Below, one piece after another: positions 1,001 to 33,464 of a stretch of DNA of 64,000 bases. Both the position numbers and the translations under genes were made by a program. The stretch covers positions 62,001 to 126,000 of IMG/VR virus record IMGVR_UViG_3300025536_000010; one strand, 5' to 3'. How positions within the stretch are numbered: position 1 is the stretch's first letter; each line of letters starts with the position of its first letter. The notes under the pieces are model-generated. The model did not search any database, was not told where the DNA came from, and was given only the letters and a program-made list of their open reading frames with translations.

Positions 1001-2221
1001 ATGCGCTGGGAAGAGATCCCGCTGGTCACGGATGACTGGGCCGTCAAAGTCGCTGCCCCGGCGTACGACATCCGTTGTGCCGTGGCCGGTGTCTACACGG
1101 CAGTTCCTATCGGTGTCTACTACCACCCGGGCCTGGAAAAAGCCGCGCTGTTCCCGCAAGGGACCGACGCTGCCGACCAGGCCCGGGTGCTCGCTGCGAC
1201 TGAGCGCGCGGTTGGACCCTCCGGGGTCCGACCGCTTTTTCTTACCTATCAGGAGGTGGGGGCTCCCGAAACCCAGTGGGTCAAGGTCGCCTACTCGCCC
1301 ACGCTGCGACGTCTCGGCGAGGCCACAAACTTCTTCCCCGGGCAGTACCCAGGCGGGCTGCCCAACCACCCGTCGCCGGTCGCGGCCATGCTGACGTCCG
1401 GCCTGGTCGGGGCGGGCCTCGGCTGGGGCGGCGGCAAGCTCCTCAACAAGTTGCTGCCCGAGCGCTTCGGGGACAACCTGGGGCGGACGGGCCTGATCCT
1501 CGGCGGCTTGCTGGGGGCTGCCCCCGGCGCCGCGTGGGGCGGTGTCAACACGCTGACCGGCAACCGCTTTAACGACTCCTCCCTCACGCAGGGCGACCCA
1601 CTCCAGGCAGACCTGCTGTTTCCGCGAGCGATGGACGGCTCCAACGCCGTACCGCCGGCGCAGGGGGCCGCGCCGCTTGAAGGGATCAAGGACTTCGTCA
1701 CCACGCAGCGCAGCGTGAACCCCAAGAAGCTGCTCAAATTCTCCGAGGATCTGGAGGCCGTACCGTTGGGCAAACGCTACCAGGCGGCCGTCGACCTGGT
1801 CAAAGAAGCCTTCGGGGACTCTTTCGGCGCGGAACCGGACGACCTGGGACCGACGCCGCTGGACGTCAACGTGAACAGCCTGGGGCAGACGCTTTGGCAG
1901 GCTGGAGCTACGCCGCGTCTGGCAGCCTCCACGATGGGCGCCATGTTCGCCGCTCAGCAGTTCCCCGACGCGCGGGCGCAGCCTGGTCTAGTGACGGCTC
2001 ACCAGATGGGGCAGCTGGCCCAGAGCATGGGGCAACCCTACCAGGAAGGCCCGAAGACAAACTACGGGCTCAACGCCGCCAAGGACTTCATCAAGGGCAC
2101 GGCGTTCGGGCTGGGCGCAAACGCCCTGGTCGGTACGCCGTACCGGGCCGGCACGTTTGGCCTGGCCAACGCTGGCCTTGGTGTCATAGGTGCTGTGGTG
2201 TCCAACTTCTTCGGAGGTTAG
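1001..2221 (+). CDS. Hypothetical virion/internal protein with glycine-zipper segments and K-x-A motifs
   Basis: 406-aa ORF; VKVA twice, VKEA; GLVGAGLGWGGG and GGLLGAAPG segments. Confidence 0.7.
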   Translation: MRWEEIPLVTDDWAVKVAAPAYDIRCAVAGVYTAVPIGVYYHPGLEKAALFPQGTDAADQARVLAATERAVGPSGVRPLFLTYQEVGAPETQWVKVAYSPTLRRLGEATNFFPGQYPGGLPNHPSPVAAMLTSGLVGAGLGWGGGKLLNKLLPERFGDNLGRTGLILGGLLGAAPGAAWGGVNTLTGNRFNDSSLTQGDPLQADLLFPRAMDGSNAVPPAQGAAPLEGIKDFVTTQRSVNPKKLLKFSEDLEAVPLGKRYQAAVDLVKEAFGDSFGAEPDDLGPTPLDVNVNSLGQTLWQAGATPRLAASTMGAMFAAQQFPDARAQPGLVTAHQMGQLAQSMGQPYQEGPKTNYGLNAAKDFIKGTAFGLGANALVGTPYRAGTFGLANAGLGVIGAVVSNFFGG

Positions 2222-2265
2222 AATACCGGAAGTTGAAGGGACTCTTTAACACGGAGGTTTTGCTC

Positions 2266-2709
2266 ATGGACGTAGCTACCGAGTTCAAGGCAGCCATCGA
2301 CGCCGTCATCGCCGACTACAAGGCGAAGGCCAAGGATGGGCTGACCATCCCCGAGATCTGGGAACTCTCCAGCAACGCACTCGCCACGTTCGTCAGCCTC
2401 GCCGGCAAGCTCAAGACCCTGAGCGGCGCCGACAAGAAGAAGCTGGTCATGGACGCGGCGGCCGACTTCTACGACAAGGTCATCGCGCCCATCGACATCC
2501 CCAGGGTGCCGAACTTCGTCGAGGTCACGGTGGTCGACCCCGCCGTGCGCCAGCTGTGGCTGATGCTCGCGGACGGGGCCGTCGAGGCCCTGGTCAACAT
2601 CTTCAACAAGTCCGATGGTTGGTTCAAGGAACCGGCCGACGACGGCACCTGGAAGCCGACCACGCCGACTGGCAATCCCGCGCTACCCCCAGGCTTCACA
2701 CCGTACTGA
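2266..2709 (+). CDS. Hypothetical protein
   Basis: ATG at 2266 preceded by CACGGAGG SD; typical codon usage. Confidence 0.75.
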   Translation: MDVATEFKAAIDAVIADYKAKAKDGLTIPEIWELSSNALATFVSLAGKLKTLSGADKKKLVMDAAADFYDKVIAPIDIPRVPNFVEVTVVDPAVRQLWLMLADGAVEALVNIFNKSDGWFKEPADDGTWKPTTPTGNPALPPGFTPY

Positions 2710-2810
2710 GAGGGACTCCGGGAGTCTGTGGCCTCCCGGGGAGCAACTGGCCCTGCCTGGATCGTTTCCGGGCAGGGCTTTCTCAAAACCGGCTTTTAGG
2801 AACGGACTCC

Positions 2811-3212
2811 ATGAACTACAACGGGATGACCTTCCTCGGCAACGGTTCCGTACTCAATCTGCAAGAAGATGTCGTCCGCTTCGGCCCGCTTCGCTTCTGG
2901 GCGGAACGTGGCCTGGTCCACGTTGAAGACGCGACCGACAACAGCTACGAAGTCATGTCAGTGCGGACCTTCCTCAGCCGCGCCCGCGGGCTGTCCGACA
3001 TGATCGGCAACTCGACCCAGCGCGAGATGCACAGCGAGGACCGCTATGACCAGATGGAGCGGACGCGCCACCTCACTTTCCTGGAAGGTGCGGCCAACCT
3101 CGCCCGCAAGGCCCAGATTCAGGGCATGCCCTCGGACCCCAGTGCCCGCCGCGAACTGGTGCGCCGGCGGCCCAAAAGCGTCGTCGTCCCCGCCTACGGC
3201 GGCGGCATGTAA
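2811..3212 (+). CDS. Hypothetical protein
   Basis: ATG 2811 (MNYNGMTF...), in frame with the listed 2556 ORF. Confidence 0.7.
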   Translation: MNYNGMTFLGNGSVLNLQEDVVRFGPLRFWAERGLVHVEDATDNSYEVMSVRTFLSRARGLSDMIGNSTQREMHSEDRYDQMERTRHLTFLEGAANLARKAQIQGMPSDPSARRELVRRRPKSVVVPAYGGGM

Positions 3213-3230
3213 CGAGACAAGGAGGCAGGG

Positions 3231-3644
3231 ATGCCACTTAACGCAAGGGAAGCATTCAAGGTTGGTTTCCTGGCCCGCTGCGTCGAGGACGGCTTGAGCC
3301 CCGACGAGATGCTGGACCGTGTCAAGTTCGCTGCTGAACTCCTGGAGAAGCGCGCCGGCATCATTAGCACGCTCGGCGGTAAACTGGCCGACGTCGGCCA
3401 GGGTATCGGCTCAGCGGCGCTCGGCTACGGCTTGCCGCTGGCCCTGGCGGCCCCACCCATTTTGGGCGGAGTCGCGGGCTACGGCTTAGCCAGAGCCACC
3501 GACATCGACGACACCGACATCGACGACGTCAAGGACCGCGAGGTCATGGACGAGTACGTCCGGCAGACAGCCAGGCTCAAACGGCAGCGGGCGGCGCGCG
3601 ACTACCAGAAGGCAAAGCAGCAGACAGGCCGGATCTTCATGTAA
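3231..3644 (+). CDS. Hypothetical K-x-A motif protein
   Basis: AAGGAGG SD; VKFA, EKRA followed by a Gly-rich hydrophobic segment. Confidence 0.75.
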   Translation: MPLNAREAFKVGFLARCVEDGLSPDEMLDRVKFAAELLEKRAGIISTLGGKLADVGQGIGSAALGYGLPLALAAPPILGGVAGYGLARATDIDDTDIDDVKDREVMDEYVRQTARLKRQRAARDYQKAKQQTGRIFM

Positions 3645-3659
3645 GCAGGGTGAACCCCT

Positions 3660-4094
3660 ATGCCTTCGAGCTTGGTGAAGTTCAGCAACCGGACACGGGC
3701 ATCGGGGGGTCGCCACCTCCACTGGAACCGGCTAGAGTTCGACGGCCTGCCGTTCCGCGGCGACATGGCCCCGATCATGCCGGAGGAGGAGTACGAGGCC
3801 CGAGCCGTTCGCATCTCCGATTTCCGCAACGGCTTTTTCGATGTCCAGGACGCTCAGGAGAACAAGTGGTACTGCGACGTGATGGAGTGCTGCTTCAACG
3901 GCTGGTTCAAACTGTGGTACGAAGAAAAGTTCTGGGTCGGGCCGGACGGCAAGCGCACCACGAAGCATTACCTGGAGTGGGTCGAATACTATATGGAGGA
4001 CGGCACGCGGACGCCGTTCGTCACCAGTGGCATGATGGAGATGGCGCATGGACAGCAAAACCTCCTCGGACATTATCAGCAGGGTCCGGGCTGA
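3660..4094 (+). CDS. Hypothetical protein
   Basis: 144-aa aromatic-rich globular ORF in the frame with typical codon bias. Confidence 0.7.
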   Translation: MPSSLVKFSNRTRASGGRHLHWNRLEFDGLPFRGDMAPIMPEEEYEARAVRISDFRNGFFDVQDAQENKWYCDVMECCFNGWFKLWYEEKFWVGPDGKRTTKHYLEWVEYYMEDGTRTPFVTSGMMEMAHGQQNLLGHYQQGPG

Positions 4095-4965
4095 GAAGCA
4101 GGCGTTTCTGGGTCTGGGCGAGGCACAGCCGGACACGGCTGGGTTCGCTGACGCGATCCAGGACATGGCCTCGGCGCAGCTCAAGGCCGACGCGGGCCGC
4201 GACGTGCGCAACCTGGCCCTAGCTGCCCTGGGTGTGGGCGTCGCCGGGCGCGGGGCCGTGGGCCTCGTCAACGCGCTCAAAGGCGACAAGCCGAAGAAGA
4301 CGCGCAGCGGCCCTACCATGCTGCCCTTGCCGTACCCGGTCGAGCCGGCGGTCATGCCCGGCAACATCAAGGCCGGCGGCTTCCTCAGCGGGGACGCCGC
4401 TTCCACGAAGTCCGGCATCCCCTGGTACACGCCGGCCATGTTCCTCGGCGGCCTGGGTGGGCTGGCGGCCGGCTGGAAAGGCATGGACGCACTGCTGGAC
4501 GCGCGTCGCAAGAAGGAGCGCGAGAACGAACTGATAACCGCCCGCCAGCAGTTCCACGACGCGCTGCTGTCGCAATACGACAAGCCCCTGGCACTCAAGA
4601 AGGCAGCCGAGGCGACGACGATGGAGAAGGTCGGCGCGCTTCTGGACAGCCTGTTCGACAAGTTCACCGGCACCCTGGAGAAAACCTCCATCGACTGGTC
4701 CAACCTGGGCGGGATGGCCACGGGCGGCTACGGGGCCTACGCCGGCCTCTCGGGCCTGCTTGCCGGCGCCCTGGTCTACGACAAGATCCAGAAGCGTTCG
4801 CAGCGTGCGGTCCTGGAGAAGGCCATGCAGCGCCGACAGCGGCGCGAGTTCATGCAGCGGCCGACCGAGATCTACGCGATCCCGGAGCCGGTGTCAGCCG
4901 TGCCCAAGGCCAACTTCAAGGACGAGATGAAGCTCCTGACGGAGTCTCCCGAAGCGGAGGTGTAA
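4048..4965 (+). CDS. Hypothetical K-x-A motif protein with glycine zippers
   Basis: EKQA, IKAG, KKAA, EKTS; three GxxxG hydrophobic segments. Confidence 0.75.
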   Translation: MDSKTSSDIISRVRAEKQAFLGLGEAQPDTAGFADAIQDMASAQLKADAGRDVRNLALAALGVGVAGRGAVGLVNALKGDKPKKTRSGPTMLPLPYPVEPAVMPGNIKAGGFLSGDAASTKSGIPWYTPAMFLGGLGGLAAGWKGMDALLDARRKKERENELITARQQFHDALLSQYDKPLALKKAAEATTMEKVGALLDSLFDKFTGTLEKTSIDWSNLGGMATGGYGAYAGLSGLLAGALVYDKIQKRSQRAVLEKAMQRRQRREFMQRPTEIYAIPEPVSAVPKANFKDEMKLLTESPEAEV

Positions 4966-18696: not shown

Positions 18697-18725
18697 CCGG
18701 TTATGTCTTGCAAGGAGTGCAAAGT

Positions 18726-19715: not shown

Positions 19716-19743
19716 GTCAAGGACGACAAAAGGGAAGGAACCC

Positions 19744-23966: not shown

Positions 23967-25346
23967 ATGATGGCCAACACCATCGACAGCACGGAGGAGC
24001 GTCAACTCCTGGAAGCTGTCAAGAAAGCGGTCGACTACGTCGACGGCGCGGGCCTCAGTCCCGATGCGGCCATCGAGAAGGTGGCGCGGGCGGAGCAGTT
24101 CGGCCCCGGCAAGATCAAGCTGATCGCCTACGCCTACAACACCGGCCGGCAAACCGGCCAGTGGGACACCGGCGGCAACGTCCTCGACAAGCTCGCCAGC
24201 TACCCGCTGGCGGACCCGGACAAGATCGTACAAAGCCTCTACAACAGCGCGTCGCCAGCTGAGAAGCAGGCGGCAGCGCGGTTGCCGGAGGAGTACGCCT
24301 TCCCGCCTGGCTGGCTGGAGATGCAGCAGCGCGAGAAGGTCGCCCGCGCGCCACTGCCGATGGAGATGCCGAAGCCGACTGAGTTGCAGCGCGATCCGGT
24401 CGAGGCGTTCCACCGCGCAACCGGCAACATCAAACGGGCGAAGCACGCCGTCGATCAGCTGAACCGCGAAGCTAGCAGCGCCGAGGACGCGGTGCGGCGC
24501 AACGTTTTCCAGCTGGTCAGCTATTTCCGCAAGGCAGCCCACGACCGCATGCCGTTCGAGCATGTTGAGTGCGTGGCGCGAACGTACTTCGGCCCAGCTG
24601 CGCAGCCGCTCATGGACGTGGTCTACGGTCAGGCCAGGCTACGCGAGAAGCGGGCCGGAGCGCTGCCGCCGATTCTCACCAACGCCATCAACCAGCGGGC
24701 CGAACCGTTCTCGATCATCCGCGACTGCGTCAAAGCAGCCGAGAACTGCAACCTGGCCAAGCAGCAGGCCAAACTGGGTACGGAGAAGCTGGCCTCTTTC
24801 GAGAAGGAGCAGTTGCTCCCTTTCTCGGCGGCCGGGGGGTCGAAGCCGCAAGGTCTGGCGTCGTCTGCTCGCATCCAAATCGCAGGTCTGGATTGTGAGA
24901 AGGCCGCCAGCATCCTGGGCTCCCCGGCACTTGGCGCGGCAGTGGGCACCATGCTCGGTCGGACCATCGGCACGGTCGGTAAGAGCAAAGACGATCTGGT
25001 CGAAGACGCCTGGATGAACCTGGAAGATCCGAACCACGCCAACGAGATCCGCAAGATCCGCGCCCACACGATGCTCAACGAGCTAATGACGGACCCGGAC
25101 GACCCGATCTCGGGCTACGAGCCCGACCGGGTGCTCAAGGCGTACAACGAGATCTCCCAGGTCACCCCGCGCGTCGCCGAGAACGCCGCTACGCTCCGTC
25201 CGGCACTGCGGCGGTCGCTGGAAGGCCACACGCAACCGTTCGAGTCCAAGGAACTGACGGACATCGAGAAGGGACTGGCGGCGACGCGCATGAGCACGCC
25301 GAACACCAGTATCCTCAATAACTCCCCGGACTCGCTCTTGGGGTAG
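23967..25346 (+). CDS. Hypothetical K-x-A motif head-module protein
   Basis: TAAGGAGG SD; EKQA, EKVA, RKAA, EKRA, EKAA. Confidence 0.8.
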   Translation: MMANTIDSTEERQLLEAVKKAVDYVDGAGLSPDAAIEKVARAEQFGPGKIKLIAYAYNTGRQTGQWDTGGNVLDKLASYPLADPDKIVQSLYNSASPAEKQAAARLPEEYAFPPGWLEMQQREKVARAPLPMEMPKPTELQRDPVEAFHRATGNIKRAKHAVDQLNREASSAEDAVRRNVFQLVSYFRKAAHDRMPFEHVECVARTYFGPAAQPLMDVVYGQARLREKRAGALPPILTNAINQRAEPFSIIRDCVKAAENCNLAKQQAKLGTEKLASFEKEQLLPFSAAGGSKPQGLASSARIQIAGLDCEKAASILGSPALGAAVGTMLGRTIGTVGKSKDDLVEDAWMNLEDPNHANEIRKIRAHTMLNELMTDPDDPISGYEPDRVLKAYNEISQVTPRVAENAATLRPALRRSLEGHTQPFESKELTDIEKGLAATRMSTPNTSILNNSPDSLLG

Positions 25347-25355
25347 GAGGCACGG

Positions 25356-26744
25356 ATGCTGCTCGACGGAACGCTGCAAGACGCGGTGGAGGCCCTGGCC
25401 AAGCGGGCTGCGGACCTGCGTACGCGCCCTGTCACGGTAGCGGAGCGAGAAAAGGTCGCTGCGGCAGACTTCCTGGCGGGTCTGGGCGACTGGGTCAAAA
25501 GCAACCCACTCCAGGCTGGTTCGCTGCTCGGTGGCGTGGCCGGCGCCGGCCTGGGCGGTGCCAGCACGGCCTTCGGCAACCGCGGCAAGCCGGAGGAACA
25601 AAAACGAAGCGTCCTCAGTTCGATGCTGACTGGCGGCCTGGCGGGCACGGCCCTGGGTGGCGGTGGTGCCCTGGCGTACAAAGGCTACCAGGGTATGCAG
25701 ACCGGGCAGCAAGGCTTCCAGCCGGGTGACGACCTGCGCCCGGGAGAGTTTGCCAGGGACGGGCAGAAGTTCAAGATCGACCCCAAGGTGCTGCGACAAA
25801 ACCCCGGTTTGCACTCCGAGGTTCGCAAGCTGACGGCGCAAGCAAACCCGCTCGATACGGGGTTGAAAAGCGTCCTCGGCGCCGGCAAGGCGCTGCTGGA
25901 CCGCCAGATCGCACCAGACCAGGGCTTCGGCAACCCCGATGGTAACTTCCTGGATAAGTACCTACCCGCCACCAGTACCTGGCTGCCGCGCCTGGGTTTG
26001 GCCGATGCTGCGCTGCACAGCCAGAAGCTGCGCCTGGGTGAGCGTATGGGTATGGGTTTCGTACGCCCGGAACGATCCACGGACATCAACCACCTGCTGG
26101 AGGGTATCAAGGGCAAGGACAGTGGCATCCCGGAGGCGATCCAAAAGGCGATGCACCAGCAGAACCAACCAGGCGGACCCGGTGGCACACTCATGGGCAT
26201 GCCGGCGAGCCCGACTCCGGGCGACGTGCATGTGCCGTTCTCCGGGCCGAACGACAAGCGTACCGTGGCCAACATCCTTACCGAAGGTAACCGCGGCGCG
26301 GGCTCCTGGAAGGACTGGTTCAAAGACCGCCTCAAGAAGCCAGGTTGGGCCAAAGGGCAAGGGCATGAGAGCGTCCTCGACGTCAAACATCAGCCGATGA
26401 AAGACGTCGTCGAGGAAACGAAAGGCCCCACCGGGTCGTACAAGCAGACGCTCAAGCAGCCAGACGGACCACCTGTGGTGGAGTCCCTTTCGCGGCAGCA
26501 ACTAGAACAGGCTAAGCTGCGAGGCTTCCGCGAACTGAACAAGGACTCGCCGCGCAGCGGGCTCTACAAAGGCATCCTCGGGCAGCGCAACCTCGGTTCG
26601 CCGATGGCGCGCATCGGCGGGCGCATAGCCGGTTACGGTCTGGCGCCGCTCGCTGAGTATGCCGTCCGCTCGCACCTGGAAGACATGAACAAGCAAGACC
26701 GGCTGCGGCAGCTGATGGCTGCCCACGCCCAGCGCACCGAGTAA
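25356..26744 (+). CDS. Hypothetical K-x-A / glycine-zipper protein
   Basis: AKRA, EKVA then LLGGVAGAGLGG and GGLAGTALGGGG. Confidence 0.78.
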   Translation: MLLDGTLQDAVEALAKRAADLRTRPVTVAEREKVAAADFLAGLGDWVKSNPLQAGSLLGGVAGAGLGGASTAFGNRGKPEEQKRSVLSSMLTGGLAGTALGGGGALAYKGYQGMQTGQQGFQPGDDLRPGEFARDGQKFKIDPKVLRQNPGLHSEVRKLTAQANPLDTGLKSVLGAGKALLDRQIAPDQGFGNPDGNFLDKYLPATSTWLPRLGLADAALHSQKLRLGERMGMGFVRPERSTDINHLLEGIKGKDSGIPEAIQKAMHQQNQPGGPGGTLMGMPASPTPGDVHVPFSGPNDKRTVANILTEGNRGAGSWKDWFKDRLKKPGWAKGQGHESVLDVKHQPMKDVVEETKGPTGSYKQTLKQPDGPPVVESLSRQQLEQAKLRGFRELNKDSPRSGLYKGILGQRNLGSPMARIGGRIAGYGLAPLAEYAVRSHLEDMNKQDRLRQLMAAHAQRTE

Positions 26745-26758
26745 GGAGACTCGCAATC

Positions 26759-28282
26759 ATGGCAATGGTGAAAATCGTGAGCCCGTGCGGCTGGGACTTC
26801 GACGGCCCAGTCGTGTCGCTCGTGAAAGTGGCGTCGCGTGGCCTCCGCGGCCACGACCGCGACCTGTTCATCAAGCGCGCCTACGGGTCTGCCAACGTCT
26901 TCCTGCCCTACCTGGACTCGGTGAAATTCGCAGCCGACGAGGAGCCGGTTCACCTGATCGCCCTGGGTGCCAGCGAAGCCTACGGGGCCAACCGCAACGG
27001 CGACGGCTTCAAAGAAGCGACCTGCAAGGCGTGCCACGATACGTTCGTGAAGTTTGCCAGGTTCTACCGCAACCACAAGAACAAAGACACGGCCATCTCC
27101 TACGGCCACGTCAAACTGTCGGCGTACAACCCAGTGATGCGCCGCGTCGAACTGCTGGTAGCCCTCAACAAGGAAAAGTCGGCGGTCGACCGCAACGGCG
27201 GTTTCGTGGCGGACAAGGAACTGGAGAAGCTCGCCAAGGGCCAGGACATTCCCGTCAGCATGGCCTGTCGCGTGCCCTACGACATCTGCTCGGAGTGTGG
27301 CAACAAGGCGCGCACCCGCGACGAATACTGCAAAGCGGCTTCCTGCCCAGGCGGTGGCTGCTCCGAAAACCTGACGAAGCTCGTCAAGAAGGGCAGCGAC
27401 GTACGCCACGTCCACGTCGACAATCCGACACCGCATTGGTTCGACATCAGCGCCGTGTTCCGTCCGGCCGACCGCATCGCCTACGGCAGCAGGGCCGACT
27501 GGCTCCAGAAGGCTGCGGCGGACGCCTGGGACGGCAGCTACGGTACGGACGGTGCGAAAATGGCGACCGACCTCCAGGTCATGGCCCCGCTGGCTGTCGT
27601 GCTGGCGATGGACACCATGCTCCCGGGCGAGTGGACGCCGTACCTGGGCGATCAGGTGAAGATCGCGCACGGCCTGGACCTGATGGAACAGCGGGAGCAC
27701 CTGCACGTCCACGACGAGGTCAAGCGGGCCTTTGCCGCTGACATGCAGCCGGACGTCGACCTGGTCGCCCTCGACCTTATCTCCGACAACCAGCAGAAGG
27801 TGGCCGCTGCCCTGGGGGCGCTGGCCGACCAGAAGATCGTCCTCTCGCTCCGCGATTTCGCCCGCATGACCAAGCGTGCGGATTTCACCGACGACGCCGG
27901 CAGCTGCCTCAAGGGCGTCTACGGACGTATGATTGCGGACGGCAGCCTGGAGAAACGTCTCGCCCAGAACAAGTACGCCCCTGCGGAGAAGCTGGCCAGC
28001 GTGAAACAGCGGCAGCTGGCCGCGACGATGCGGCAGACCTACGCCCTGGAAAAGCACGCCGTCGATCACCGCTGTCAGGTGTCAGCACTGCGGCAGCATC
28101 GGCTGCCGGAGTCCAAATCCACTTTTTGGAACGAGAAGAAAGCCCACGACAACACCACGGCTGAGGAACTCGCCAGGGACTACGCAATCTACAAGGTCGC
28201 TGCCCTGCGGCGTATCTCCCAGTTTGACGACGAGTTCCTCTTGACCGCACGCCTCAGCGCGTGCCAGAATCAGGTGGTCTAG
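26759..28282 (+). CDS. Putative prohead (capsid maturation) protease
   Basis: YRNH...VELL...VSMACRVPYDICSECGN (candidate His/Ser plus CxxC); lies directly upstream of the scaffold-like and capsid genes. Confidence 0.6.
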   Translation: MAMVKIVSPCGWDFDGPVVSLVKVASRGLRGHDRDLFIKRAYGSANVFLPYLDSVKFAADEEPVHLIALGASEAYGANRNGDGFKEATCKACHDTFVKFARFYRNHKNKDTAISYGHVKLSAYNPVMRRVELLVALNKEKSAVDRNGGFVADKELEKLAKGQDIPVSMACRVPYDICSECGNKARTRDEYCKAASCPGGGCSENLTKLVKKGSDVRHVHVDNPTPHWFDISAVFRPADRIAYGSRADWLQKAAADAWDGSYGTDGAKMATDLQVMAPLAVVLAMDTMLPGEWTPYLGDQVKIAHGLDLMEQREHLHVHDEVKRAFAADMQPDVDLVALDLISDNQQKVAAALGALADQKIVLSLRDFARMTKRADFTDDAGSCLKGVYGRMIADGSLEKRLAQNKYAPAEKLASVKQRQLAATMRQTYALEKHAVDHRCQVSALRQHRLPESKSTFWNEKKAHDNTTAEELARDYAIYKVAALRRISQFDDEFLLTARLSACQNQVV

Positions 28283-28338: not shown

Positions 28339-29691
28339 ATGGCAGCCAACCCCATTTCGACTATCGCGGACTTCCTGAACGCTGTCGGCGGCGGGCAGAC
28401 CAAGCAAGCGGATGCCCCCCTGAGCGAAGCCGGAAGTATCGGCGGTGCAACCTCTCACCCGGTCAAGAGCGTCGACGACCGCCTCCAGAAAGCCAAGGAA
28501 GGCGAGCGTTCGAGCGAGAACAGCAAAGACGTCAAGGAAGACCAGGGCGCGCCAAGCGTCGAGAACGCTCCCGAGGCCAAGGCCGGGTCCGACCTGATGT
28601 CGTTGGCTCGCGCGTTCGCTCGCACCAGCGGCACGCAGAAGAAGGCCGAGGGCGGCGCGGTCATGCAGGGCGGCTCGGCCGCCGACGACCAACTCCAGAT
28701 CGGCACCAACAAGCAGCCGACCGGCGACGACCCGAAGTCCGAAACCAACTCGGCCAAGTCCGGCAAGGAAGATCCCGGTTCGAGCCACCCGGCGCGCACC
28801 GACAACGATCAGCTGGACGGCCACAAGTACAGCCTCGACGCCAACGCGCCGCTCGAACAGCTGGCCAAGCTGACCAAGGAAGCCGGCGACAACCTCTGCG
28901 CCGCGATCTTCCACGTCAGCAAGAACGGCGGGGCGCAGAAGACCGCCGAACACGCGCAGCAAGTCGGCGGCAGCGTCGTGCAGCAGCAACCGCAGACCAA
29001 GCAGGCCGAGATCGACCCCTACCTGGCCCACCAGGCTGGCTGGGAGATGGCCTCGCTGATCGCCGGCAAGTTCGACAAGCGCGCGGCCGACAGCATGGTC
29101 ACCAACACCATGTACAGCATCGTCAAGCAGGCCAGCGACGACGCCGACCTCTACATCTGGTACGCCAAGAACTTCCTCCAGGGTCAGCAGAAGCAGGCCG
29201 AAGGCGAGATGCCGATGGACCCTGCGGCTGGCGGCGGCGCCCCTCCGGGCGGCGACCCGATGGCCGGCGGCGGCGGTGGTGGCGGGGAAGACGCCATGAT
29301 GGCTGCCCTGGGCGGCGGTGCCCCTCCGGGCGGTGACCCGATGGGCGGCGGCGCTCCTCCGGGTGGCGACCCGATGGGCGGCGGCGGGGGCGGCGGCATG
29401 GACCCCGAAACGATGGCGTTGGCGCAGCTGCTCCAGCAGGCCAACATCAGCCCCGAAGAACTCGAAGCGGCTCTGGCCGAACAGGGCGGCGGCGGTGGCG
29501 GTGACCCGATGGGCGGCATGGGCGGCGACCCGATGGCCGGCGGCGGCGGTGAACCTCCGATGCCGGGCGGCGAGAAGCCGGCCAACGACCGCGGCGGCCG
29601 CGCTGCACAGCAGAGCACCAAGCATGCCGGCGAAATGCACAAGTACATCACCGAACTCGTCGGCCGTTCCCGGGCACGGAGGGCGGCCTAA
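28339..29691 (+). CDS. Putative scaffold / internal head protein
   Basis: Disordered, about ten K-x-A motifs, GGDPM repeats; sits between protease and capsid genes. Confidence 0.55.
   Translation: MAANPISTIADFLNAVGGGQTKQADAPLSEAGSIGGATSHPVKSVDDRLQKAKEGERSSENSKDVKEDQGAPSVENAPEAKAGSDLMSLARAFARTSGTQKKAEGGAVMQGGSAADDQLQIGTNKQPTGDDPKSETNSAKSGKEDPGSSHPARTDNDQLDGHKYSLDANAPLEQLAKLTKEAGDNLCAAIFHVSKNGGAQKTAEHAQQVGGSVVQQQPQTKQAEIDPYLAHQAGWEMASLIAGKFDKRAADSMVTNTMYSIVKQASDDADLYIWYAKNFLQGQQKQAEGEMPMDPAAGGGAPPGGDPMAGGGGGGGEDAMMAALGGGAPPGGDPMGGGAPPGGDPMGGGGGGGMDPETMALAQLLQQANISPEELEAALAEQGGGGGGDPMGGMGGDPMAGGGGEPPMPGGEKPANDRGGRAAQQSTKHAGEMHKYITELVGRSRARRAA
29212..29570 (+). repeat. Coding tandem repeats GGAPPGGDPM(G/A)GG
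   Basis: Repeated ggcgacccgatgggcggc-like units. Confidence 0.8.
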
Positions 29692-29782
29692 GCGGACTGT
29701 CCCGGAGGCTGACCGCCCAGCAGCCTCCGGGTCGCTCGCTTGCTGACCAAGCCGACACTACAAGCTCACGGAGGAGTTTACC

Positions 29783-30301
29783 TTGAACCCCACGCAGCAA
29801 ATCTCTGTCCCCTCGGCGCTGCTGGACAACATGATCCAGTACGTCGAGGTTTCGAGTCTGATGGGCAAGCGCGCCCTGGACGAAATCGACGTCCATCGCG
29901 CTGGCCAGCAGAAGGCCGCGGCGCTGCGCAACCCGCTCCTGGACTACATGGTCCAGCAGGGCGTGGTGGCGGAACACCAGAAGGAAGCCGCTCAGGCCAT
30001 GCTGGGCAGTCACGCCGAAACGATGCAGCTGCTCAAGGCAGCCATCGACAAAATCGTCGACCTGCGCAAGAACGGGACGACGAAGACGGCCGGCGCCGAA
30101 CCAGGCGAGGCTGTGGACCCGAACACCCTGGGCGCAACGTCGCCGGTGGGCGGGGCCAACGGGTACACGGCCGGCGACGGTTTCGTGGCCCCGCTGACGA
30201 AGCAGGGCGAGTATGACTCGCTCAACGACGTCATGGTCGGCCGCAAGACCAACCTGGTCAAAGCGTCCGACAAGCCGCTGCTGGCCCTGATCGGCCGGTA
30301 A
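29783..30301 (+). CDS. Hypothetical head-module protein
   Basis: TTG start after CACGGAGGAG; QKAA, TKTA. Confidence 0.72.
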   Translation: MNPTQQISVPSALLDNMIQYVEVSSLMGKRALDEIDVHRAGQQKAAALRNPLLDYMVQQGVVAEHQKEAAQAMLGSHAETMQLLKAAIDKIVDLRKNGTTKTAGAEPGEAVDPNTLGATSPVGGANGYTAGDGFVAPLTKQGEYDSLNDVMVGRKTNLVKASDKPLLALIGR

Positions 30302-30369
30302 CGGTTCCCAAGGAAACGGATTCCGCACAGTCCCGCAGGGACTACTGACCTTCAAGGAGGAAATCCTCA

Positions 30370-30903: not shown

Positions 30904-30988
30904 CGTCAACCCGTTGTAACCAGCAACCGTCGCCAAGCACGCTCGTTTGACCCAAGGAAGAACATAACCCACACGGAGGTTCCATCAC

Positions 30989-31930
30989 ATGCCCCAGATC
31001 CTCACCCAGGAAGAGTCGAAGGCGCTGTCCTATGCGATCTTCGAGAAACTCTCTTCCCGTGATCCGATCCTGGAAAAGCAGGCGGTGGATGCCGTCAACG
31101 AGTTCACGCGCACGAAGATGCGTGAAGACGGCTTCTACCGGCGGATCATGCCGCCACTCCCCATCGGCAACGACGAACTGGATCGGCAGGTCGATACCGA
31201 CAAGCCGGTCAAAGTGGTGGACAAGGAGCCGGATTCGCCGGCTGCCATCTCCATCCCGTTCGCCACGCTGCCGACCAATCTGTACATCCGCGGTCCGCGC
31301 TACCGCGTCATGTTCGACCGCATCGCCACGCCACGGTTCACCAAGGACGTGGACGAGCTGCGCACCTGGATCATGGACATCCGCCAGGTGCTCTCGGACA
31401 ACGCGATCAAGGACATGCTGGCGGAAGAAGATGGGAAGTTCATTCGGGCCGTGAACACCGCTCTGGTGGGCGCGGGCCTGACGGTCCCGACTTCCGGCAC
31501 GGTCCAGCACGAAGTCATCGCTGGCGGCATCACCCGCGACACCCTCTGCGACTCGCTCAAGGTGATGCCCAACACCCCGAGCAACCTGGAGGTCCACCTC
31601 GTTCTGGTGAACAACATCACGATCAAGGAAGTGATGAAGTTCACGCACAACGAAATGGGTGGCACGCTCTCCGAAGACATCATGAAGAACGGCTGGAGCC
31701 TCCAGAAGTTCCTCGGTGTCAACTGGATCGTGACCATCAAGAAGGGCCTGGTTCCGACGAACACGATGTACCAGTTCGCGGACCCCAAGTTCATCGGCAA
31801 GAGTTACGTCCTCGAAGACACGACCATGTACATTCGTCGTGAGGCGTACATGCTGGAATTCTTCGCGTACGAGACAATGGGTGGGACCATCGGTCACACC
31901 TCGGGTCTTGCCCGCATCGACTACCAGTAA
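30989..31930 (+). CDS. Major capsid protein (HK97-like fold, predicted)
   Basis: 313 aa, strong SD, followed by a double hairpin/terminator; typical position after protease-scaffold-decoration; EKQA at about residue 30. Confidence 0.7.
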   Translation: MPQILTQEESKALSYAIFEKLSSRDPILEKQAVDAVNEFTRTKMREDGFYRRIMPPLPIGNDELDRQVDTDKPVKVVDKEPDSPAAISIPFATLPTNLYIRGPRYRVMFDRIATPRFTKDVDELRTWIMDIRQVLSDNAIKDMLAEEDGKFIRAVNTALVGAGLTVPTSGTVQHEVIAGGITRDTLCDSLKVMPNTPSNLEVHLVLVNNITIKEVMKFTHNEMGGTLSEDIMKNGWSLQKFLGVNWIVTIKKGLVPTNTMYQFADPKFIGKSYVLEDTTMYIRREAYMLEFFAYETMGGTIGHTSGLARIDYQ

Positions 31931-31938
31931 GGACTGAT

Positions 31939-31975
31939 CGACAACGACGGGACGACCGACGTCCCGTCGTTGTCG
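31939..31975. repeat. Perfect 16-bp inverted repeat (5-nt loop)
   Basis: CGACAACGACGGGACG-ACCGA-CGTCCCGTCGTTGTCG. Confidence 0.9.
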
Positions 31976-31980
31976 GCAGC

Positions 31981-32021
31981 AGGGGTGCCCGGGGGTTGGG
32001 AGAGGCTCTCGGGCACCTTTT
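31981..32021 (+). terminator. Intrinsic terminator after the MCP
   Basis: GGTGCCCG...CGGGCACC stem followed by TTTT. Confidence 0.65.
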
Positions 32022-32057
32022 CTAAAAGCCAGTTTTTGACGCGCAGGGAGGCGTATC

Positions 32058-32429
32058 ATGCCACTGAACGAACACGACCCTCGGCCCCAAGGTGCGGCGA
32101 TCCGCAACCGCGCCACCGCTAACGGAACGGCCCCGGTCGGCACCTACACGGATACGAGCCTGACCAAGGCCAACGTCGACCAGGCCATGCCCAGCGTGCT
32201 GCCGAACCGCTCCGGGGCGCGCACCCTGGGCAACATCCGGCCGGTCTACGCCAGCGACCGCGTGCAGGAGATCGACCAGACGGCGACCAACGAAAGTCCG
32301 CCGCCCACGCCGCACTCGAAGCCGAAATGGGAGATCGAGACGACGGCTGACGACATCAGCCGCGCCAAAGATCCCTATCGGAACGACGGCATGATCTCGC
32401 AGAACGACATGTTCAAAAACCAGGGCTAA
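32058..32429 (+). CDS. Hypothetical protein
   Basis: GGGAGG SD, 123 aa. Confidence 0.7.
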
Positions 32430-32491
32430 ATGCCCTGGGTCCGCAACAAGCTCCGACCGTTCAGACCTTGTCGCCCGCAGAAAGGATCGTC

Positions 32492-32950
32492 ATGAAGAAG
32501 CTCAACACCGCCCTTTGTCTAGCGCTCGTGCTGGTGGCCCTGCTGTTCGTGGTGGCGGCCCCGGTGCAGGCGCAGTATTACGGCGGCGGGTACTACCGCT
32601 CGTACAGCAGCTACAGCTACCCAAGCTACTACAGCACGCCGTACTACTACAGCTACCCGAGCTACTACACCTACAGCTACCCGAGCAGCTATACCTACAG
32701 CGCACCTGCGGCGTACACGGCACCGTGTCCGAAGGAAAACGTCAGCGATCAGGTACTCAAGGAACTGCTGATCCGCAAGCTGCTGACCGACCAACCGGCG
32801 CAGCAGAACGGGCAGGCACAGTACCAGACGCAGCCGCAAGGATACACCCAAGGCAGTCAACCGCTGACGACCCAGGAAGTGCAAGTGCTGCGACAGCTGC
32901 TGCAACAGGTGCTGCAACAGCAGCAAGCACAGCAAGCCCCGTCCAAGTGA
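32492..32950 (+). CDS. Secreted Tyr/Ser-rich repeat protein
   Basis: Signal peptide MKKLNTALCLALVLVALLFVVAAPVQA, then YSYPSYY repeats and a Gln-rich tail. Confidence 0.75.
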   Translation: MKKLNTALCLALVLVALLFVVAAPVQAQYYGGGYYRSYSSYSYPSYYSTPYYYSYPSYYTYSYPSSYTYSAPAAYTAPCPKENVSDQVLKELLIRKLLTDQPAQQNGQAQYQTQPQGYTQGSQPLTTQEVQVLRQLLQQVLQQQQAQQAPSK

Positions 32951-33011
32951 CGGGGACAACCGCAGCGTTCTCTAAACCACTTTTTGAAACCAGCAGGATG
33001 GAGGAGATACC

Positions 33012-33464
33012 GTGAGCCAGCAAGCGACTCTGCCCGACCCGCAGACCGCCTATGACAACTTGTTCCAGGCGGTTCACGCGCGGGTGTTCTTCCAGAAGTG
33101 CGCGTCCGCGGGCATCATGCCGCGCAGCCGCCAGGAGGCCCAGTGGATGCTGGAGACGGCCGGCAAGCTCCGCACCGTCGACCAGGCTGGTGGCCTACAG
33201 AAGGACGCCCAGGACGACAACGACAACCCCTACTACCAGATGAACCGGCATCTGGATCAGGTGTTGGCCCAGCACGGGCTCGACGGCGGCATCAAAGCTG
33301 CCGCGGCACAGGAAGAAGAGTCGGCCATCCGGCAGCTGACTGTCGACCTGAGCAACGATCCGCTCCTGTACAACTCGGTGCTGTCCCTCAAGACGGCCGA
33401 GGCCCAGGACATCCAGCAGCAGTACGAGGCGTGGAAGCGGCAGAACCAAGGGGCCGCCGCCTGA
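33012..33464 (+). CDS. Hypothetical K-x-A motif protein
   Basis: GGAGGAG SD; QKDA, IKAA, LKTA. Confidence 0.75.
   Translation: MSQQATLPDPQTAYDNLFQAVHARVFFQKCASAGIMPRSRQEAQWMLETAGKLRTVDQAGGLQKDAQDDNDNPYYQMNRHLDQVLAQHGLDGGIKAAAAQEEESAIRQLTVDLSNDPLLYNSVLSLKTAEAQDIQQQYEAWKRQNQGAAA

What the first reader, a model, noticed from the sequence alone, without database searches (positions are those of the whole stretch)
1001..33464. Module-wide K-x-A(/S/G) motif: candidate capsid-maturation cleavage or packaging code
Seen: unrelated head-module proteins repeatedly carry x-K-x-A, often near the N-terminus or at domain borders. Examples: VKVA (1001), EKRA (3231), EKQA (4048), VKLA (8117), QKQA (11867), HKNA (18726), EKRA/IKEA (19744), EKQA/EKRA/EKAA (23967) and EKVA (25356). 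There are at least 15 in the putative protease, about ten in the scaffold, and EKQA sits at about residue 30 of the major capsid protein. The 951-aa sheath has only a few. Known: T4 gp21 and phiKZ gp175 process capsid and many internal proteins at short Glu-ending motifs. Inference: the 26759 protease cleaves at K-x-A, a different specificity, and the motif marks a large set of packaged or ejected proteins. Caveat: the K/A-rich tape measure also has chance matches.
Basis: partly seen in the sequence, partly recalled or inferred. Interest (0 to 1): 0.82.

Follow-up and report, generated by a model that had tools for sequence, protein, structure and literature searches.

The report
Likely K-x-A capsid protease cut sites
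A three-residue pattern, Lys-any-Ala, is packed into the proteins around a large phage's capsid protease gene and kept in the same proteins in about 80 related phages, so it is very probably that protease's cutting signal, one that differs from the signals proven for phages T4 and phiKZ.

Summary
K-x-A occurs 111 times in the proteins of 1001-33464 against 59.5 expected from within-protein shuffles (z 7.35). The rest of the window has 47 against 44. It is the top hit of an unbiased scan of all gapped residue pairs.

The excess is not module-wide. It sits in six proteins: 19699, 23967, 26759 (protease), 28339 (scaffold-like), 29783 and 33012. About seven further proteins, the major capsid protein among them, carry one or two conserved sites near the N-terminus. 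The RNA polymerase subunits, the interleaved head proteins and the tail proteins carry no excess.

The same six families are enriched 2.3-3.8 fold in 80 related viral contigs (protease identity 31-67%, GC 42-70%). Syntenic proteins of Salmonella phage Arash and Vibrio phage D69 show the same enrichment. Capsid K30 and A32 are invariant in 57 of 57 orthologues.

Only K-x-A is enriched. K-x-S, K-x-G, R-x-A, A-x-K and the T4, phiKZ and herpesvirus motifs are not.

The predicted fold of 26759 matches prohead proteases.

Best reading: a T4/phiKZ-style maturation system with a new predicted specificity, hydrophobic-[E/V/I/T]-K-x-A then [S/A/E]. Cleavage itself is untested. I rate it a new variant of a known kind, interest about 0.6.

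The parts
26759..28282 (+). Predicted prohead maturation protease, 507 aa. An N-terminal catalytic domain (about residues 50-245) is followed by a C-terminal helical domain. It carries 19 K-x-A sites.
   Evidence: AF2 model has pLDDT 80.7. Foldseek against BFVD hits proteins named prohead protease or prohead serine protease at E 5e-7 to 1e-3. Atlas structural TM is 0.60-0.65 to Peptidase_S78. There is no Pfam hit. K-x-A: 19 against 4.8, z 6.85.
27254..27262 (+). V-S-M with invariant Ser167, the candidate nucleophile. Invariant His65 (26951-26953) and His106 (27074-27076) are candidate partners.
   Evidence: These columns are invariant in the 46-sequence alignment A1. Coordinates were checked. 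The catalytic role is inferred and was not tested.
26873..26881 (+). Protease K39-R-A41, a near-invariant site in a predicted disordered linker before the catalytic domain. Candidate N-terminal self-processing site.
   Evidence: Both K and A are present in 100% of 114 homologues and in the same column in 0.97 of 65 loci. pLDDT is below 50 at residues 35-44.
27509..27517 (+). Protease K251-A-A253, in the disordered linker between the catalytic domain and the C-terminal helical domain. Candidate release site.
   Evidence: Both residues are present in 0.99 of 114 homologues, and a site lies within 6 columns in 1.00 of 65 loci. pLDDT is below 50 at residues 240-257.
28339..29691 (+). Scaffold-like protein, 450 aa, rich in Gly, Pro and acidic low-complexity sequence, with 10 K-x-A sites. 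The conserved anchors are K22 (28402-28410) and K247 (29077-29085).
   Evidence: K-x-A: 10 against 3.9, z 3.4. The sites are conserved islands in otherwise divergent sequence. The family is enriched 2.26 fold in 67 orthologues. The scaffold role is inferred from gene position and composition only.
30989..31930 (+). Major capsid protein, 313 aa, HK97 fold.
   Evidence: phrog_2522 at 3.3e-5. tblastn hits the annotated capsid protein of phage Arash. All top 50 PDB Foldseek hits are HK97-fold capsid proteins, best E 4e-4, from a low-confidence model with pLDDT 55.6.
31076..31084 (+). Capsid K30-Q-A32, the predicted propeptide cleavage site. The predicted mature start is V33 (VDAVNEF).
   Evidence: K and A are invariant in 57 of 57 unique orthologues, while P2 and P4 vary. 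Mean column conservation is 0.54 for residues 1-28 and 0.89 for residues 33-80. Arash and Vibrio D69 have K-E-A at residues 27-29.
19699..22383 (+). The most conserved is K57-E-A (19867-19875).
   Evidence: K-x-A: 17 against 5.9, z 5.0. The family is enriched 2.44 fold in 79 orthologues. K57 is in the same column in 0.97 of them. No family or fold match was found.
23967..25346 (+). 459-aa protein of unknown function with 12 K-x-A sites. The conserved ones are K38, K75 and K124.
   Evidence: K-x-A: 12 against 3.6, z 5.0. The family is enriched 2.76 fold in 80 orthologues. Site conservation is 0.85-0.97.
29783..30301 (+). 172-aa protein between the scaffold-like gene and the capsid gene, with 5 K-x-A sites.
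   Evidence: K-x-A: 5 against 1.4, z 3.3. The family is enriched 3.8 fold.
33012..33464 (+). 150-aa protein with 4 K-x-A sites.
   Evidence: K-x-A: 4 against 0.8, z 3.7. The family is enriched 2.9 fold in 54 orthologues.
25356..26744 (+). 462-aa protein directly upstream of the protease. It has N-proximal sites only (K16-R-A at 25401-25409 and K33-V-A at 25452-25460). In relatives these are followed by a Gly-rich hydrophobic stretch.
   Evidence: The syntenic gene has a K-x-A in its first 70 aa in 0.98 of 59 unique relatives against 0.44 expected, although the family shows no overall enrichment and diverges fast.
11867..12604 (+). 245-aa Gly/Pro-rich protein with one N-proximal site, K28-Q-A (11948-11956), followed by F-I-P.
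   Evidence: K-x-A followed by F-[IV]-P is conserved at residues 15-30 in four diverged orthologues from L088, L089 and L087.
3231..3644 (+). 137-aa protein with N-proximal sites K32-F-A (3324-3332) and K40-R-A (3348-3356), followed by a Gly-rich hydrophobic stretch.
   Evidence: Both sites are conserved in the L092 orthologue, which is 52% identical.
4048..4965 (+). 305-aa protein with the N-proximal site K17-Q-A (4096-4104).
   Evidence: The L092 orthologue has K-Y-A at the same position. This rests on a single relative.
8117..10030 (+). 637-aa protein with N-proximal sites K10-A-A and K17-L-A (8165-8173). The gene lies between the two halves of a split intein.
   Evidence: The L092 counterpart has K-E-A at residue 17, although its N-terminus shows no detectable similarity. 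This rests on a single relative.
18708..19715 (+).
   Evidence: The L088 orthologue has K-S-A at residue 18, plus K-L-A and K-R-A further on. This rests on a single relative.

Best explanation
K-x-A is the recognition motif of the phage's own prohead maturation protease (26759-28282). That protein is a serine protease of the HK97/T4/herpesvirus assemblin fold.

The fuller motif is: hydrophobic residue at P5, E/V/I/T at P4, K at P3, any residue except G, P or D at P2, A at P1, then S/A/E at P1' and D/A at P2'.

Inferred mechanism: once the prohead shell has assembled, the protease cuts after the Ala. The predicted substrates fall into three groups.

1. It removes a 32-residue leader from the capsid protein.
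2. It trims N-terminal propeptides from about six other head proteins (3231, 4048, 8117, 11867, 18708, 25356).
3. It chops six multi-site proteins into short pieces so that they can leave the shell or be reshaped. These are the scaffold-like 28339, then 19699, 23967, 29783 and 33012, and the protease itself. If every site is cut, the largest protease fragment is 59 residues.

Near-invariant sites in the disordered linkers on either side of the catalytic domain (K39-R-A41 and K251-A-A253) would free that domain from its C-terminal helical domain. This resembles the release site of herpesvirus protease precursors.

Shown here: the motif, its enrichment, its conservation, the set of proteins carrying it, and the protease and capsid folds. 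Inferred: that cutting happens at all, that this protease does it, and that the bond cut is the one after Ala.
For: **Enrichment in the window.**
- K-x-A is enriched only in a defined set of proteins: z 3.3-6.9 in six of them, 67 observed against 20.7 expected in total.
- No excess appears in the K/A-rich 2024-aa protein (17 against 15.2).

**Conservation in protease homologues.**
- In 120 homologues the mean is 17.1 sites against 4.4 expected, and the lowest ratio is 2.7.
- Motif K and A are 0.79 and 0.85 conserved, against 0.50 and 0.59 for other K and A. The middle residue varies.

**The same families in relatives.**
- In 80 related contigs (protease identity 31-67%, GC 42-70%) the same six families are enriched 2.3-3.8 fold in 99-100% of members.
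- Most interleaved families sit at 0.58-1.13 of expectation and two (w10027, w37912) at about 1.3; none approaches the 2.3-3.8 fold of the six.

**Specificity.**
- K-x-S, K-x-G, K-x-T, R-x-A and A-x-K are not enriched.
- The flanking positions P5, P4, P2, P1' and P2' show clear preferences, as protease subsites would.

**Capsid protein.**
- K30 and A32 are invariant in 57 of 57 orthologues.
- They lie at the border between a variable leader and an almost invariant body.

**N-proximal sites.**
- A K-x-A in the first 70 residues is near-universal (0.95-1.00) in eight families, against 0.20-0.54 expected.
- It is at or below expectation in eight others.
- The N-proximal sites of 3231, 4048, 8117, 11867 and 18708 recur in diverged orthologues.

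**Distant cultured phages.**
- In Arash and Vibrio D69 the capsid protein is only 27-29% identical to the window's.
- Syntenic proteins there with no detectable similarity to the window's are enriched: Arash gp220 has 10 against 3, gp223 8 against 3.1 and gp225 7 against 1.8; D69 has 11 against 3.9 and 10 against 2.9.
- Both capsid proteins have K-E-A at residues 27-29.

**The enzyme.**
- The predicted fold matches prohead proteases.
- Ser167, His65 and His106 are invariant.
- Its homologue gp19 of phage G is annotated as a head maturation protease (PMC12484599).

**Other points.**
- The signal exists only in the coding frame.
- From established knowledge: T4 gp21 and phiKZ gp175 process capsid, scaffold and internal proteins and themselves at three-residue motifs. 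Herpesvirus assemblins, which share the fold, cut after Ala in (V/L/I)-x-A followed by S.
Against: - No cleaved N-terminus has been observed for any member of the clade. The Arash proteomics gives coverage only, and the preparation looks impure: it lists 116 'virion' proteins, including metabolic enzymes.
- The protease matches no Pfam protease family. The whole-chain PDB search gave nothing significant. The catalytic residues were not mapped in three dimensions.
- Several conserved sites lie inside the predicted folded catalytic domain (K56, K98, K140, K157). There they could be conserved for structural reasons.
- Most of the excess across relatives comes from sites kept at or near homologous positions. 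Sites at new positions are only at about chance level. The 80 loci are therefore not 80 independent tests.
- The capsid P1' residue is I, L or V, whereas the pooled sites prefer S, A or E and disfavour L.
- The capsid protein of phage G has no K-x-A at all.
Confidence: 0.75

Rival explanations
1. K-x-A is a binding or targeting signal rather than a cleavage site. It would be a short motif through which these proteins dock to the scaffold, the inner shell surface or the portal during prohead assembly.
For: - The motif is confined to head-module proteins and often lies near the N-terminus. In T4, capsid-targeting sequences lie there too (established knowledge).
- Nothing in the data shows hydrolysis.
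Against: - Ten to nineteen copies per protein, spread along the scaffold-like protein and the protease itself, fit degradation better than docking.
- In the capsid protein the motif sits exactly at the border between the variable leader and the invariant body.
- The RNA polymerase subunits are the likeliest packaged cargo by analogy with Arash, yet they lack a conserved motif.
- In T4 the targeting peptide ends at the protease site, so the two readings need not exclude each other.
Confidence: 0.1
2. The sites are cut by a different protease, either a host enzyme or another phage enzyme, and not by the 26759 product.
For: - The link between enzyme and motif rests on co-location and co-conservation only.
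- There is precedent: capsid and scaffold proteins of Staphylococcus phage 80alpha are trimmed by a host protease (my own knowledge, not checked here).
Against: - The motif persists in contigs with GC from 42% to 70%, and in phages of Salmonella and Vibrio and possibly Bacillus. That argues against dependence on one host enzyme.
- The 26759 family is present in every locus next to the substrates and is itself the most motif-dense protein.
- No other protease-like gene was seen in the module.
Confidence: 0.07
3. K-x-A is a structural or chemical feature unrelated to proteolysis. It could be a helix or coiled-coil signature, or a site where the Lys is modified or cross-linked.
For: - Several sites lie in predicted helices of the protease C-terminal domain.
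- HK97-type capsids do use Lys in isopeptide cross-links (established knowledge).
Against: - The reverse pair A-x-K sits at 0.68-0.93 of expectation, and the K/A-rich 2024-aa protein shows no excess.
- Many sites are conserved islands inside Gly/Pro-rich, evidently disordered sequence.
- An i,i+2 spacing is not a helical period.
- The proteins carrying the motif are unrelated in sequence, yet they share flanking preferences from P5 to P2'.
Confidence: 0.05
4. The pattern is a chance or compositional artefact.
For: - The proteins are fairly rich in K and A.
- The six-protein set was picked after seeing the data.
Against: - Shuffles within each protein already correct for composition (z 7.35 for the module).
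- K-x-A tops an unbiased scan of about 1600 motifs at P = 2e-9.
- The same families, and only those, replicate in relatives that were not used to choose them, including Arash and D69.
Confidence: 0.01

Closest known systems
T4 gp21 prohead protease system (Peptidase S77). It cuts after Glu in (L/I)-x-E in gp23, gp24, the scaffold core gp22, the internal proteins and itself (established knowledge).
   Same: - A three-residue motif with a free middle position.
- One site in the capsid protein removes an N-terminal leader.
- N-terminal propeptides are removed from several head proteins.
- Many sites lie in the scaffold and in the protease itself.
- The protease, scaffold and capsid genes are clustered.
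- The protease has the same fold class.
   Different: - P1 is Ala and P3 is Lys here.
- (L/I)-x-E is not enriched: 1.04 of expectation.
- No Pfam S77 hit was found.
- The capsid protein is a small 313-aa HK97-type protein, not the gp23 type.
- The protease carries a roughly 250-aa C-terminal helical domain and a Cys cluster.
phiKZ gp175 and SPN3US gp245 (Peptidase S80). These giant-phage proteases cut many head and ejection proteins at (S/A/G)-x-E (PMC10052503, PMC5694885).
   Same: - A large phage genome (the source contig is 234,886 bp).
- Genes for a multisubunit RNA polymerase lie next to the head genes.
- There are many predicted substrates, mostly through N-terminal propeptides.
- The protease is predicted to cut itself.
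- The Atlas feature search lists S80 and S77 clusters among look-alikes of the catalytic domain.
   Different: - The motif is K-x-A. (S/A/G)-x-E sits at 1.04 of expectation.
- The RNA polymerase subunits here have no conserved site.
- The capsid protein is much smaller.
- No detectable sequence relation was found.
Herpesvirus assemblin (Peptidase S21). It cuts at (V/L/I)-x-A followed by S at its release and maturation sites (established knowledge; background in PMC4498786).
   Same: - The fold class is the same as the phage prohead proteases.
- Ala is at P1, and Ser is the most enriched P1' residue here (2.8 fold).
- The protease domain is joined to a C-terminal domain by a linker holding a conserved site (K251-A-A253), which resembles the release site.
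   Different: - P3 is Lys, not a hydrophobic residue. [VLI]-x-A sits at 0.90 of expectation.
- There are many more sites and substrates.
- PDB hits to HCMV protease were short and not significant (E 1.5-1.9).
HK97 gp4 family prohead proteases (Peptidase S78).
   Same: - This is the best structural look-alike with a name: TM 0.60-0.65 over about 140 residues, with BFVD hits named 'Proheadase_HK97' or 'prohead protease'.
- The partner capsid protein has the HK97 fold.
   Different: - No S78 Pfam hit was found.
- HK97 removes a 102-residue delta domain that acts as the scaffold. Here there is a separate scaffold-like protein and a 32-residue leader.
Salmonella phage Arash (OQ632216), Vibrio phages D69, D181 and D148, and more distantly Bacillus phage G gp19.
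   Same: - Homologous protease and capsid genes.
- The same gene order.
- The same K-x-A enrichment in syntenic proteins, and K-E-A at capsid residues 27-29 in Arash and D69.
   Different: - They are only 27-42% identical.
- No paper held in the library mentions the motif.
- Phage G shows a weaker signal, and its capsid protein has no site.

Membership tests
Prohead serine protease of the HK97/T4/assemblin fold (MEROPS S78, S77, S80, S21) | Characteristic fold of the catalytic domain | tested here: met
   - The AF2 model has pLDDT 80.7.
- BFVD Foldseek hits to proteins named prohead protease or prohead serine protease have E 5e-7 to 1e-3 and probability 0.97-1.00.
- Atlas structural TM is 0.60-0.65 to Peptidase_S78 clusters.
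- The whole-chain PDB search was not significant.
Prohead serine protease of the HK97/T4/assemblin fold (MEROPS S78, S77, S80, S21) | Sequence match to a curated family model (Pfam PF04586, PF03420 or PF20034) | tested here: not met
   No Pfam hit for the whole protein at E up to 0.1. The domain alone, at E up to 10, gave only weak zinc-ribbon noise. A PDB sequence profile search found nothing.
Prohead serine protease of the HK97/T4/assemblin fold (MEROPS S78, S77, S80, S21) | Conserved Ser nucleophile and His general base | tested here: inconclusive
   Ser167 (V-S-M), His65 and His106 (N-H) are invariant in 46 sequences.
Prohead serine protease of the HK97/T4/assemblin fold (MEROPS S78, S77, S80, S21) | Gene sits next to the scaffold and major capsid genes | tested here: met
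   The order protease, scaffold-like, two small genes, capsid is conserved in the fetched relatives L005-L007; the same families recur across the 80 fetched loci. The same order holds in Arash and D69.
Prohead serine protease of the HK97/T4/assemblin fold (MEROPS S78, S77, S80, S21) | Proteolytic activity on head proteins | not testable with these tools
   This needs biochemistry or N-terminomics.
T4/phiKZ-type multi-substrate head maturation proteolysis | A short motif over-represented in scaffold or core proteins and in the protease itself | tested here: met
   The protease has 19 against 4.8 and the scaffold-like protein 10 against 3.9. This replicates in 80 loci.
T4/phiKZ-type multi-substrate head maturation proteolysis | A single conserved motif near the capsid protein N-terminus that delimits a removable leader | tested here: met
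   K30 and A32 are invariant in 57 of 57 orthologues. Leader conservation is 0.54 against 0.89 downstream. Removal of the leader itself was not observed.
T4/phiKZ-type multi-substrate head maturation proteolysis | Motif ends in Glu ((L/I)-x-E or (S/A/G)-x-E) | tested here: not met
   Both motifs sit at 1.04 of expectation in the six proteins, and at 1.07-1.13 in 311 relatives. The enriched motif is K-x-A.
Herpesvirus assemblin specificity, (V/L/I)-x-A followed by S | Ala at P1 and Ser at P1' | tested here: inconclusive
   Ala is fixed at the third motif position. Ser is the most enriched residue after it (18% of sites, 2.8 fold), followed by Ala and Glu. That the cut falls after Ala is an assumption.
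Herpesvirus assemblin specificity, (V/L/I)-x-A followed by S | Hydrophobic residue at P3 | tested here: not met
   P3 is Lys. [VLI]-x-A sits at 0.90 of expectation.
HK97-fold major capsid protein (30989-31930) | HK97 fold | tested here: met
   All top 50 PDB Foldseek hits are HK97-fold capsid proteins (SU10, lambda, YSD1, P4, SaPI1, HK97, T4), best E 4e-4. The model is low confidence at pLDDT 55.6. Also phrog_2522 at 3.3e-5 and homology to the annotated Arash capsid protein.

The most novel reading that the evidence does not exclude
A large and so far undescribed lineage of roughly 150-235 kb phages matures its capsids with an assemblin-fold protease whose specificity is Lys at P3 and Ala at P1. 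The lineage has more than 900 protease homologues in public data and includes the cultured phages Arash and Vibrio D69, and perhaps phage G. The P1-Ala/P1'-Ser preference is nearer to herpesvirus assemblin than to any characterised phage enzyme. The motif alone then predicts the full substrate list: at least 13 protein families, among them Gly-zipper or membrane-like proteins that lose an N-terminal propeptide. It also predicts the mature ends of each substrate.
Probability: 0.5. Interest if true: 0.7.

Novelty: new variant of a known kind. Interest (0 to 1): 0.6.

Why it matters
Cleavage motifs of prohead proteases are known by experiment for only a few phages. Where they are known (T4, phiKZ, SPN3US), they have been the key to telling which head proteins are scaffold, cargo or shell.

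Here the motif can be read from sequence alone, and it is sharp enough to predict four things for a whole clade of large, mostly uncultured phages whose head proteins match no known family:
- the mature capsid N-terminus
- the set of processed proteins
- the likely self-release sites of the protease
- which neighbouring proteins are not substrates

Three cultured relatives exist (Arash, Vibrio phage D69 and phage G), so the prediction can be tested directly.

A P1-Ala specificity in a phage assemblin-fold enzyme also bears on how the phage and herpesvirus maturation proteases are related.

Tried and rejected
**Searches that found nothing or too little.**
- Megablast of 22000-34000 against phage genomes: no match.
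- Pfam and PHROGs on nearly all head-module proteins gave almost nothing. The exceptions were the RNA polymerase domains, a weak capsid PHROG and an unnamed PHROG for the protease.
- A PDB sequence profile search with the protease alignment found nothing.
- The whole-chain PDB fold search of the protease gave no significant hit. HCMV protease appeared only at E 1.5-1.9 over 41-53 residues.
- An Atlas search for 19699 gave no credible fold.
- The Arash paper and its supplements hold no peptide lists, and its coverage figures are not informative.
- Literature searches for a K-x-A motif in prohead proteolysis found nothing.
- The search for related loci with single upstream proteins (8117, 4967) returned only the source contig or one relative. 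I therefore walked up one contig with the look-up of encoding contigs. One look-up was lost to a GTG start.

**Ideas rejected.**
- A DNA-level motif: the frame test argues against it.
- Ser or Gly at the third position.
- The T4, phiKZ and herpesvirus motifs.
- A helix or composition artefact: A-x-K and the K/A-rich 2024-aa protein show no excess.

**A test that did not help.** Sites at positions not shared with the window are only at chance level. Independent gain of sites could therefore not be shown.

Full report
**1. What the window is**

The window is 64% GC and its genes are read here as all lying on the + strand. It comes from a 234,886-bp viral contig, IMGVR_UViG_3300025536_000010. It has no nucleotide-level relative among sequenced phages.

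I defined 49 + strand genes and used them for all counts. A few N-termini in that set are too long, namely the 2556, 12657 and 14486 ORFs. This does not change any conclusion.

Yes.

- Against 500 shuffles within each protein, the proteins of 1001-33464 have 111 K-x-A against 59.5 expected (z 7.35). The remaining proteins have 47 against 44.1.
- In an unbiased scan of every residue pair at spacings 0-3, K-x-A ranks first in the head module at P = 2e-9. It is absent from the top of the list for the tail half, where collagen-like G/Q repeats dominate.
- The signal exists only in the reading frame. AAR-NNN-GCN occurs 67 times in frame, 10 and 0 times in the other two frames, and 1, 8 and 3 times in the reverse-strand frames. 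It is therefore a protein feature and not a DNA motif.

**3. Where the excess sits**

The excess is not module-wide. Six proteins hold it:

| Protein | Observed | Expected |
|---|---|---|
| 19699-22383 | 17 | 5.9 |
| 23967-25346 | 12 | 3.6 |
| 26759-28282 (protease) | 19 | 4.8 |
| 28339-29691 (scaffold-like) | 10 | 3.9 |
| 29783-30301 | 5 | 1.4 |
| 33012-33464 | 4 | 0.8 |

The rest of the head module has 44 against about 39.

**4. Identity of the key genes**

*Protease (26759-28282).* It has no Pfam hit. Other evidence supports the protease call.
- Its AlphaFold model has pLDDT 80.7. It shows a beta-rich domain at about residues 60-235 and a helical C-terminal half.
- The model matches predicted structures named prohead protease or prohead serine protease at E 5e-7 to 1e-3.
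- The Atlas structure search gives TM 0.60-0.65 to HK97-family prohead proteases. The feature search lists Peptidase_S77 and S80 clusters.
So is a Cys cluster: C177, C180, C191, C196 and C201.
- A distant homologue, phage G gp19, is called a head maturation protease in PMC12484599.

*Capsid protein (30989-31930).* Three lines of evidence agree.
- A weak capsid PHROG hit.
- Homology to the annotated capsid protein of phage Arash.
- A fold search in which all top 50 PDB hits are HK97-fold capsid proteins. The model is low confidence.

*Scaffold-like protein (28339-29691).* I call it scaffold-like from its position and its Gly/Pro/acidic low-complexity make-up only.

**5. Comparative test**

This is the main evidence.

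*Protease homologues.*
- The protease family has more than 900 members in public data, mostly on contigs of 100-240 kb.
- In 120 homologues down to 51% identity, the mean is 17.1 K-x-A against 4.4 expected.
- In their alignment the motif's K and A are 0.79 and 0.85 conserved, against 0.50 and 0.59 for other K and A. The middle residue varies freely.

*Related loci.*
- I fetched 80 related loci, each with 10 kb on either side of the protease. Protease identity is 31-67% and GC is 42-70%.
- The same six families are enriched 2.3-3.8 fold in 99-100% of members.
- The families interleaved with them (22393, 22869, 30370, 33527 and the tail-side genes) mostly sit at 0.58-1.13 of expectation; two families (w10027 at 1.27 and w37912 at 1.36) lie slightly above, far short of the six.
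- Unassigned ORFs with the strongest enrichment lie at the syntenic scaffold, 29783 and 33012 positions.

*Specificity.*
- The motif is sharp in every identity tier. K-x-A is 2.6-3.1 fold enriched, while K-x-S, K-x-G, K-x-T, R-x-A and A-x-K are at or below 1.
- Pooled unique sites show flanking preferences: P5 is F/L/M/I; P4 is E/I/V/T; P2 is Q/T/R, with G, P and D avoided; P1' is S/A/E, with P, W and L avoided; P2' is D/A.

**6. The capsid protein site**

K30 and A32 are invariant in 57 of 57 unique orthologues, while P2 (Q/R/T/E/N) and P4 (E/Q/I/V/T) vary. The 28 residues before the site are much less conserved than the 48 after it (0.54 against 0.89).

**7. A second class of substrates**

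A K-x-A within the first 70 residues is near-universal in eight families:
- the six multi-site families
- the capsid protein (0.98 against 0.20 expected)
- the fast-evolving gene directly upstream of the protease (0.98 against 0.44)

It is at or below expectation in eight other families.

I walked upstream in related contigs. The N-proximal sites of the following proteins recur in diverged orthologues:
- 3231 (two sites)
- 4048
- 8117
- 11867 (K-x-A followed by F-[IV]-P, in four lineages)
- 18708

The evidence for 4048, 8117 and 18708 rests on a single relative each.

The RNA polymerase beta subunit does not keep a site, and the beta-prime pieces have none.

It does not support the claim that the whole module is marked.

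**8. Distant cultured relatives**

- *Salmonella phage Arash.* Its capsid protein is 29% identical to the window's. Syntenic proteins with no detectable similarity to the window's are enriched: gp220 has 10 against 3.0, gp223 8 against 3.1 and gp225 7 against 1.8. The capsid protein has K-E-A at residues 27-29.
- *Vibrio phage D69.* It shows the same pattern.
- *Phage G.* The signal is weaker: gp19 has 8 against 2.4 and gp21 7 against 2.8. Its capsid protein has no site.

**9. Mechanism proposed**

This looks like a T4/phiKZ-style maturation system with a different motif. The protease would:
- remove a 32-residue leader from the capsid protein
- trim propeptides from about six other proteins
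- fragment six multi-site proteins, itself included

If all sites are used, the largest fragment is 59 residues for the protease and 128 for the scaffold-like protein.

Two near-invariant sites lie in low-confidence linkers on either side of the catalytic domain: K39-R-A41 and K251-A-A253. Cutting there would release a domain of about 212 residues from its helical C-terminal half. This resembles the release site of herpesvirus protease precursors (PMC4498786 for background).

By analogy with T4 and phiKZ, where the fixed third residue is P1, and with herpesvirus Ala-Ser cleavage, I place the cut after Ala. That placement is inference.

**10. Limits**

- No mature N-terminus is known for any member of the clade. 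The Arash proteomics gives no peptide data and lists 116 'virion' proteins, so it cannot settle anything.
- The catalytic residues were not checked in three dimensions.
- Some conserved sites lie inside the folded catalytic domain and may be kept for structural reasons.
- Most of the cross-species excess is retained at or near homologous positions. Sites at new positions are at chance level. The replication therefore shows purifying selection on the motif rather than repeated independent gain. The enrichment in the Arash and D69 proteins, which have no detectable similarity to the window's, is the more independent evidence.

**11. Comparison and novelty**

The known motifs are not enriched here: T4 (L/I)-x-E is at 1.04, phiKZ/SPN3US (S/A/G)-x-E at 1.04, and herpesvirus (V/L/I)-x-A at 0.90.

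I found no paper describing a K-x-A motif in prohead maturation.

I rate this a new variant of a known kind: the same logic as T4 and phiKZ, a new predicted specificity, and a large uncharacterised clade.

Noticed in passing
window 4967-8113, 8117-10030, 10027-11787: The RNA polymerase beta and beta-prime N-terminal genes appear to be joined by a split intein, with a 637-aa gene lying between the two halves (a 'fractured gene' layout). The beta ORF carries about 98 extra C-terminal residues that start with C950 in CFLAGTH, with a weak Intein_splicing hit. The beta-prime N ORF carries about 41 extra N-terminal residues that end in VLVSN, followed by S. In relatives L089 and L087 the two exteins are one continuous protein. 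L092 has the same three-ORF layout as the window.
   Followed up: partly
window 4967-18658: Genes for a multisubunit RNA polymerase lie inside the head-gene block: beta at 4967, beta-prime N part at 10027, and beta-prime C part at 14486 (true start probably 14624). In phage Arash the RNA polymerase subunits were among the most abundant proteins in the virion preparation (PMC10585845). None of the three has a conserved K-x-A site.
   Followed up: partly
protease homologues P0051, P0071, P0074, P0107, P0110: Some homologues of the protease are about 875 aa long and carry intein or homing-endonuclease domains (LAGLIDADG_3, Hint_2, Intein_splicing). This suggests inteins inserted in the protease gene.
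   Followed up: no
window 27287-27361 (protease residues 177-201): An invariant cluster of five Cys (C177, C180, C191, C196, C201) lies inside the catalytic domain just after the candidate Ser. It looks like a zinc-ribbon insertion, and I know of no such insertion in the proteases of T4, HK97 or herpesviruses (my own knowledge).
   Followed up: no
window 25356-26744 and 3231-3644; syntenic genes in L005-L084: In proteins with N-proximal K-x-A sites, the sites are often followed by a Gly-rich hydrophobic stretch (for example 'allgggvgalagg') and then a Lys/Arg-rich patch. These look like small membrane-active or glycine-zipper proteins that would lose a propeptide.
   Followed up: no
window 33977-37897: A 1306-aa collagen-like tail fibre protein with strong PHROG hits to tail fibre families. 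Its G-x-Q and G-x-x-G repeats account for the top motifs in the tail half of the window.
   Followed up: partly
window 2556-3212, 12657-14132, 14486-18658: The longest-ORF gene starts are too far upstream in three cases. Orthologues indicate real starts near residue 90 of the 2556 ORF, after 12934 for the 12657 ORF (a real 108-aa gene occupies 12608-12934), and at 14624 for the beta-prime C gene (a real 136-aa gene occupies 14217-14627).
   Followed up: partly
   Followed up: partly
window 40595-41959: A weak ParB-like hit (phrog_723, E 8e-5) in a 454-aa protein among the structural genes.
   Followed up: no
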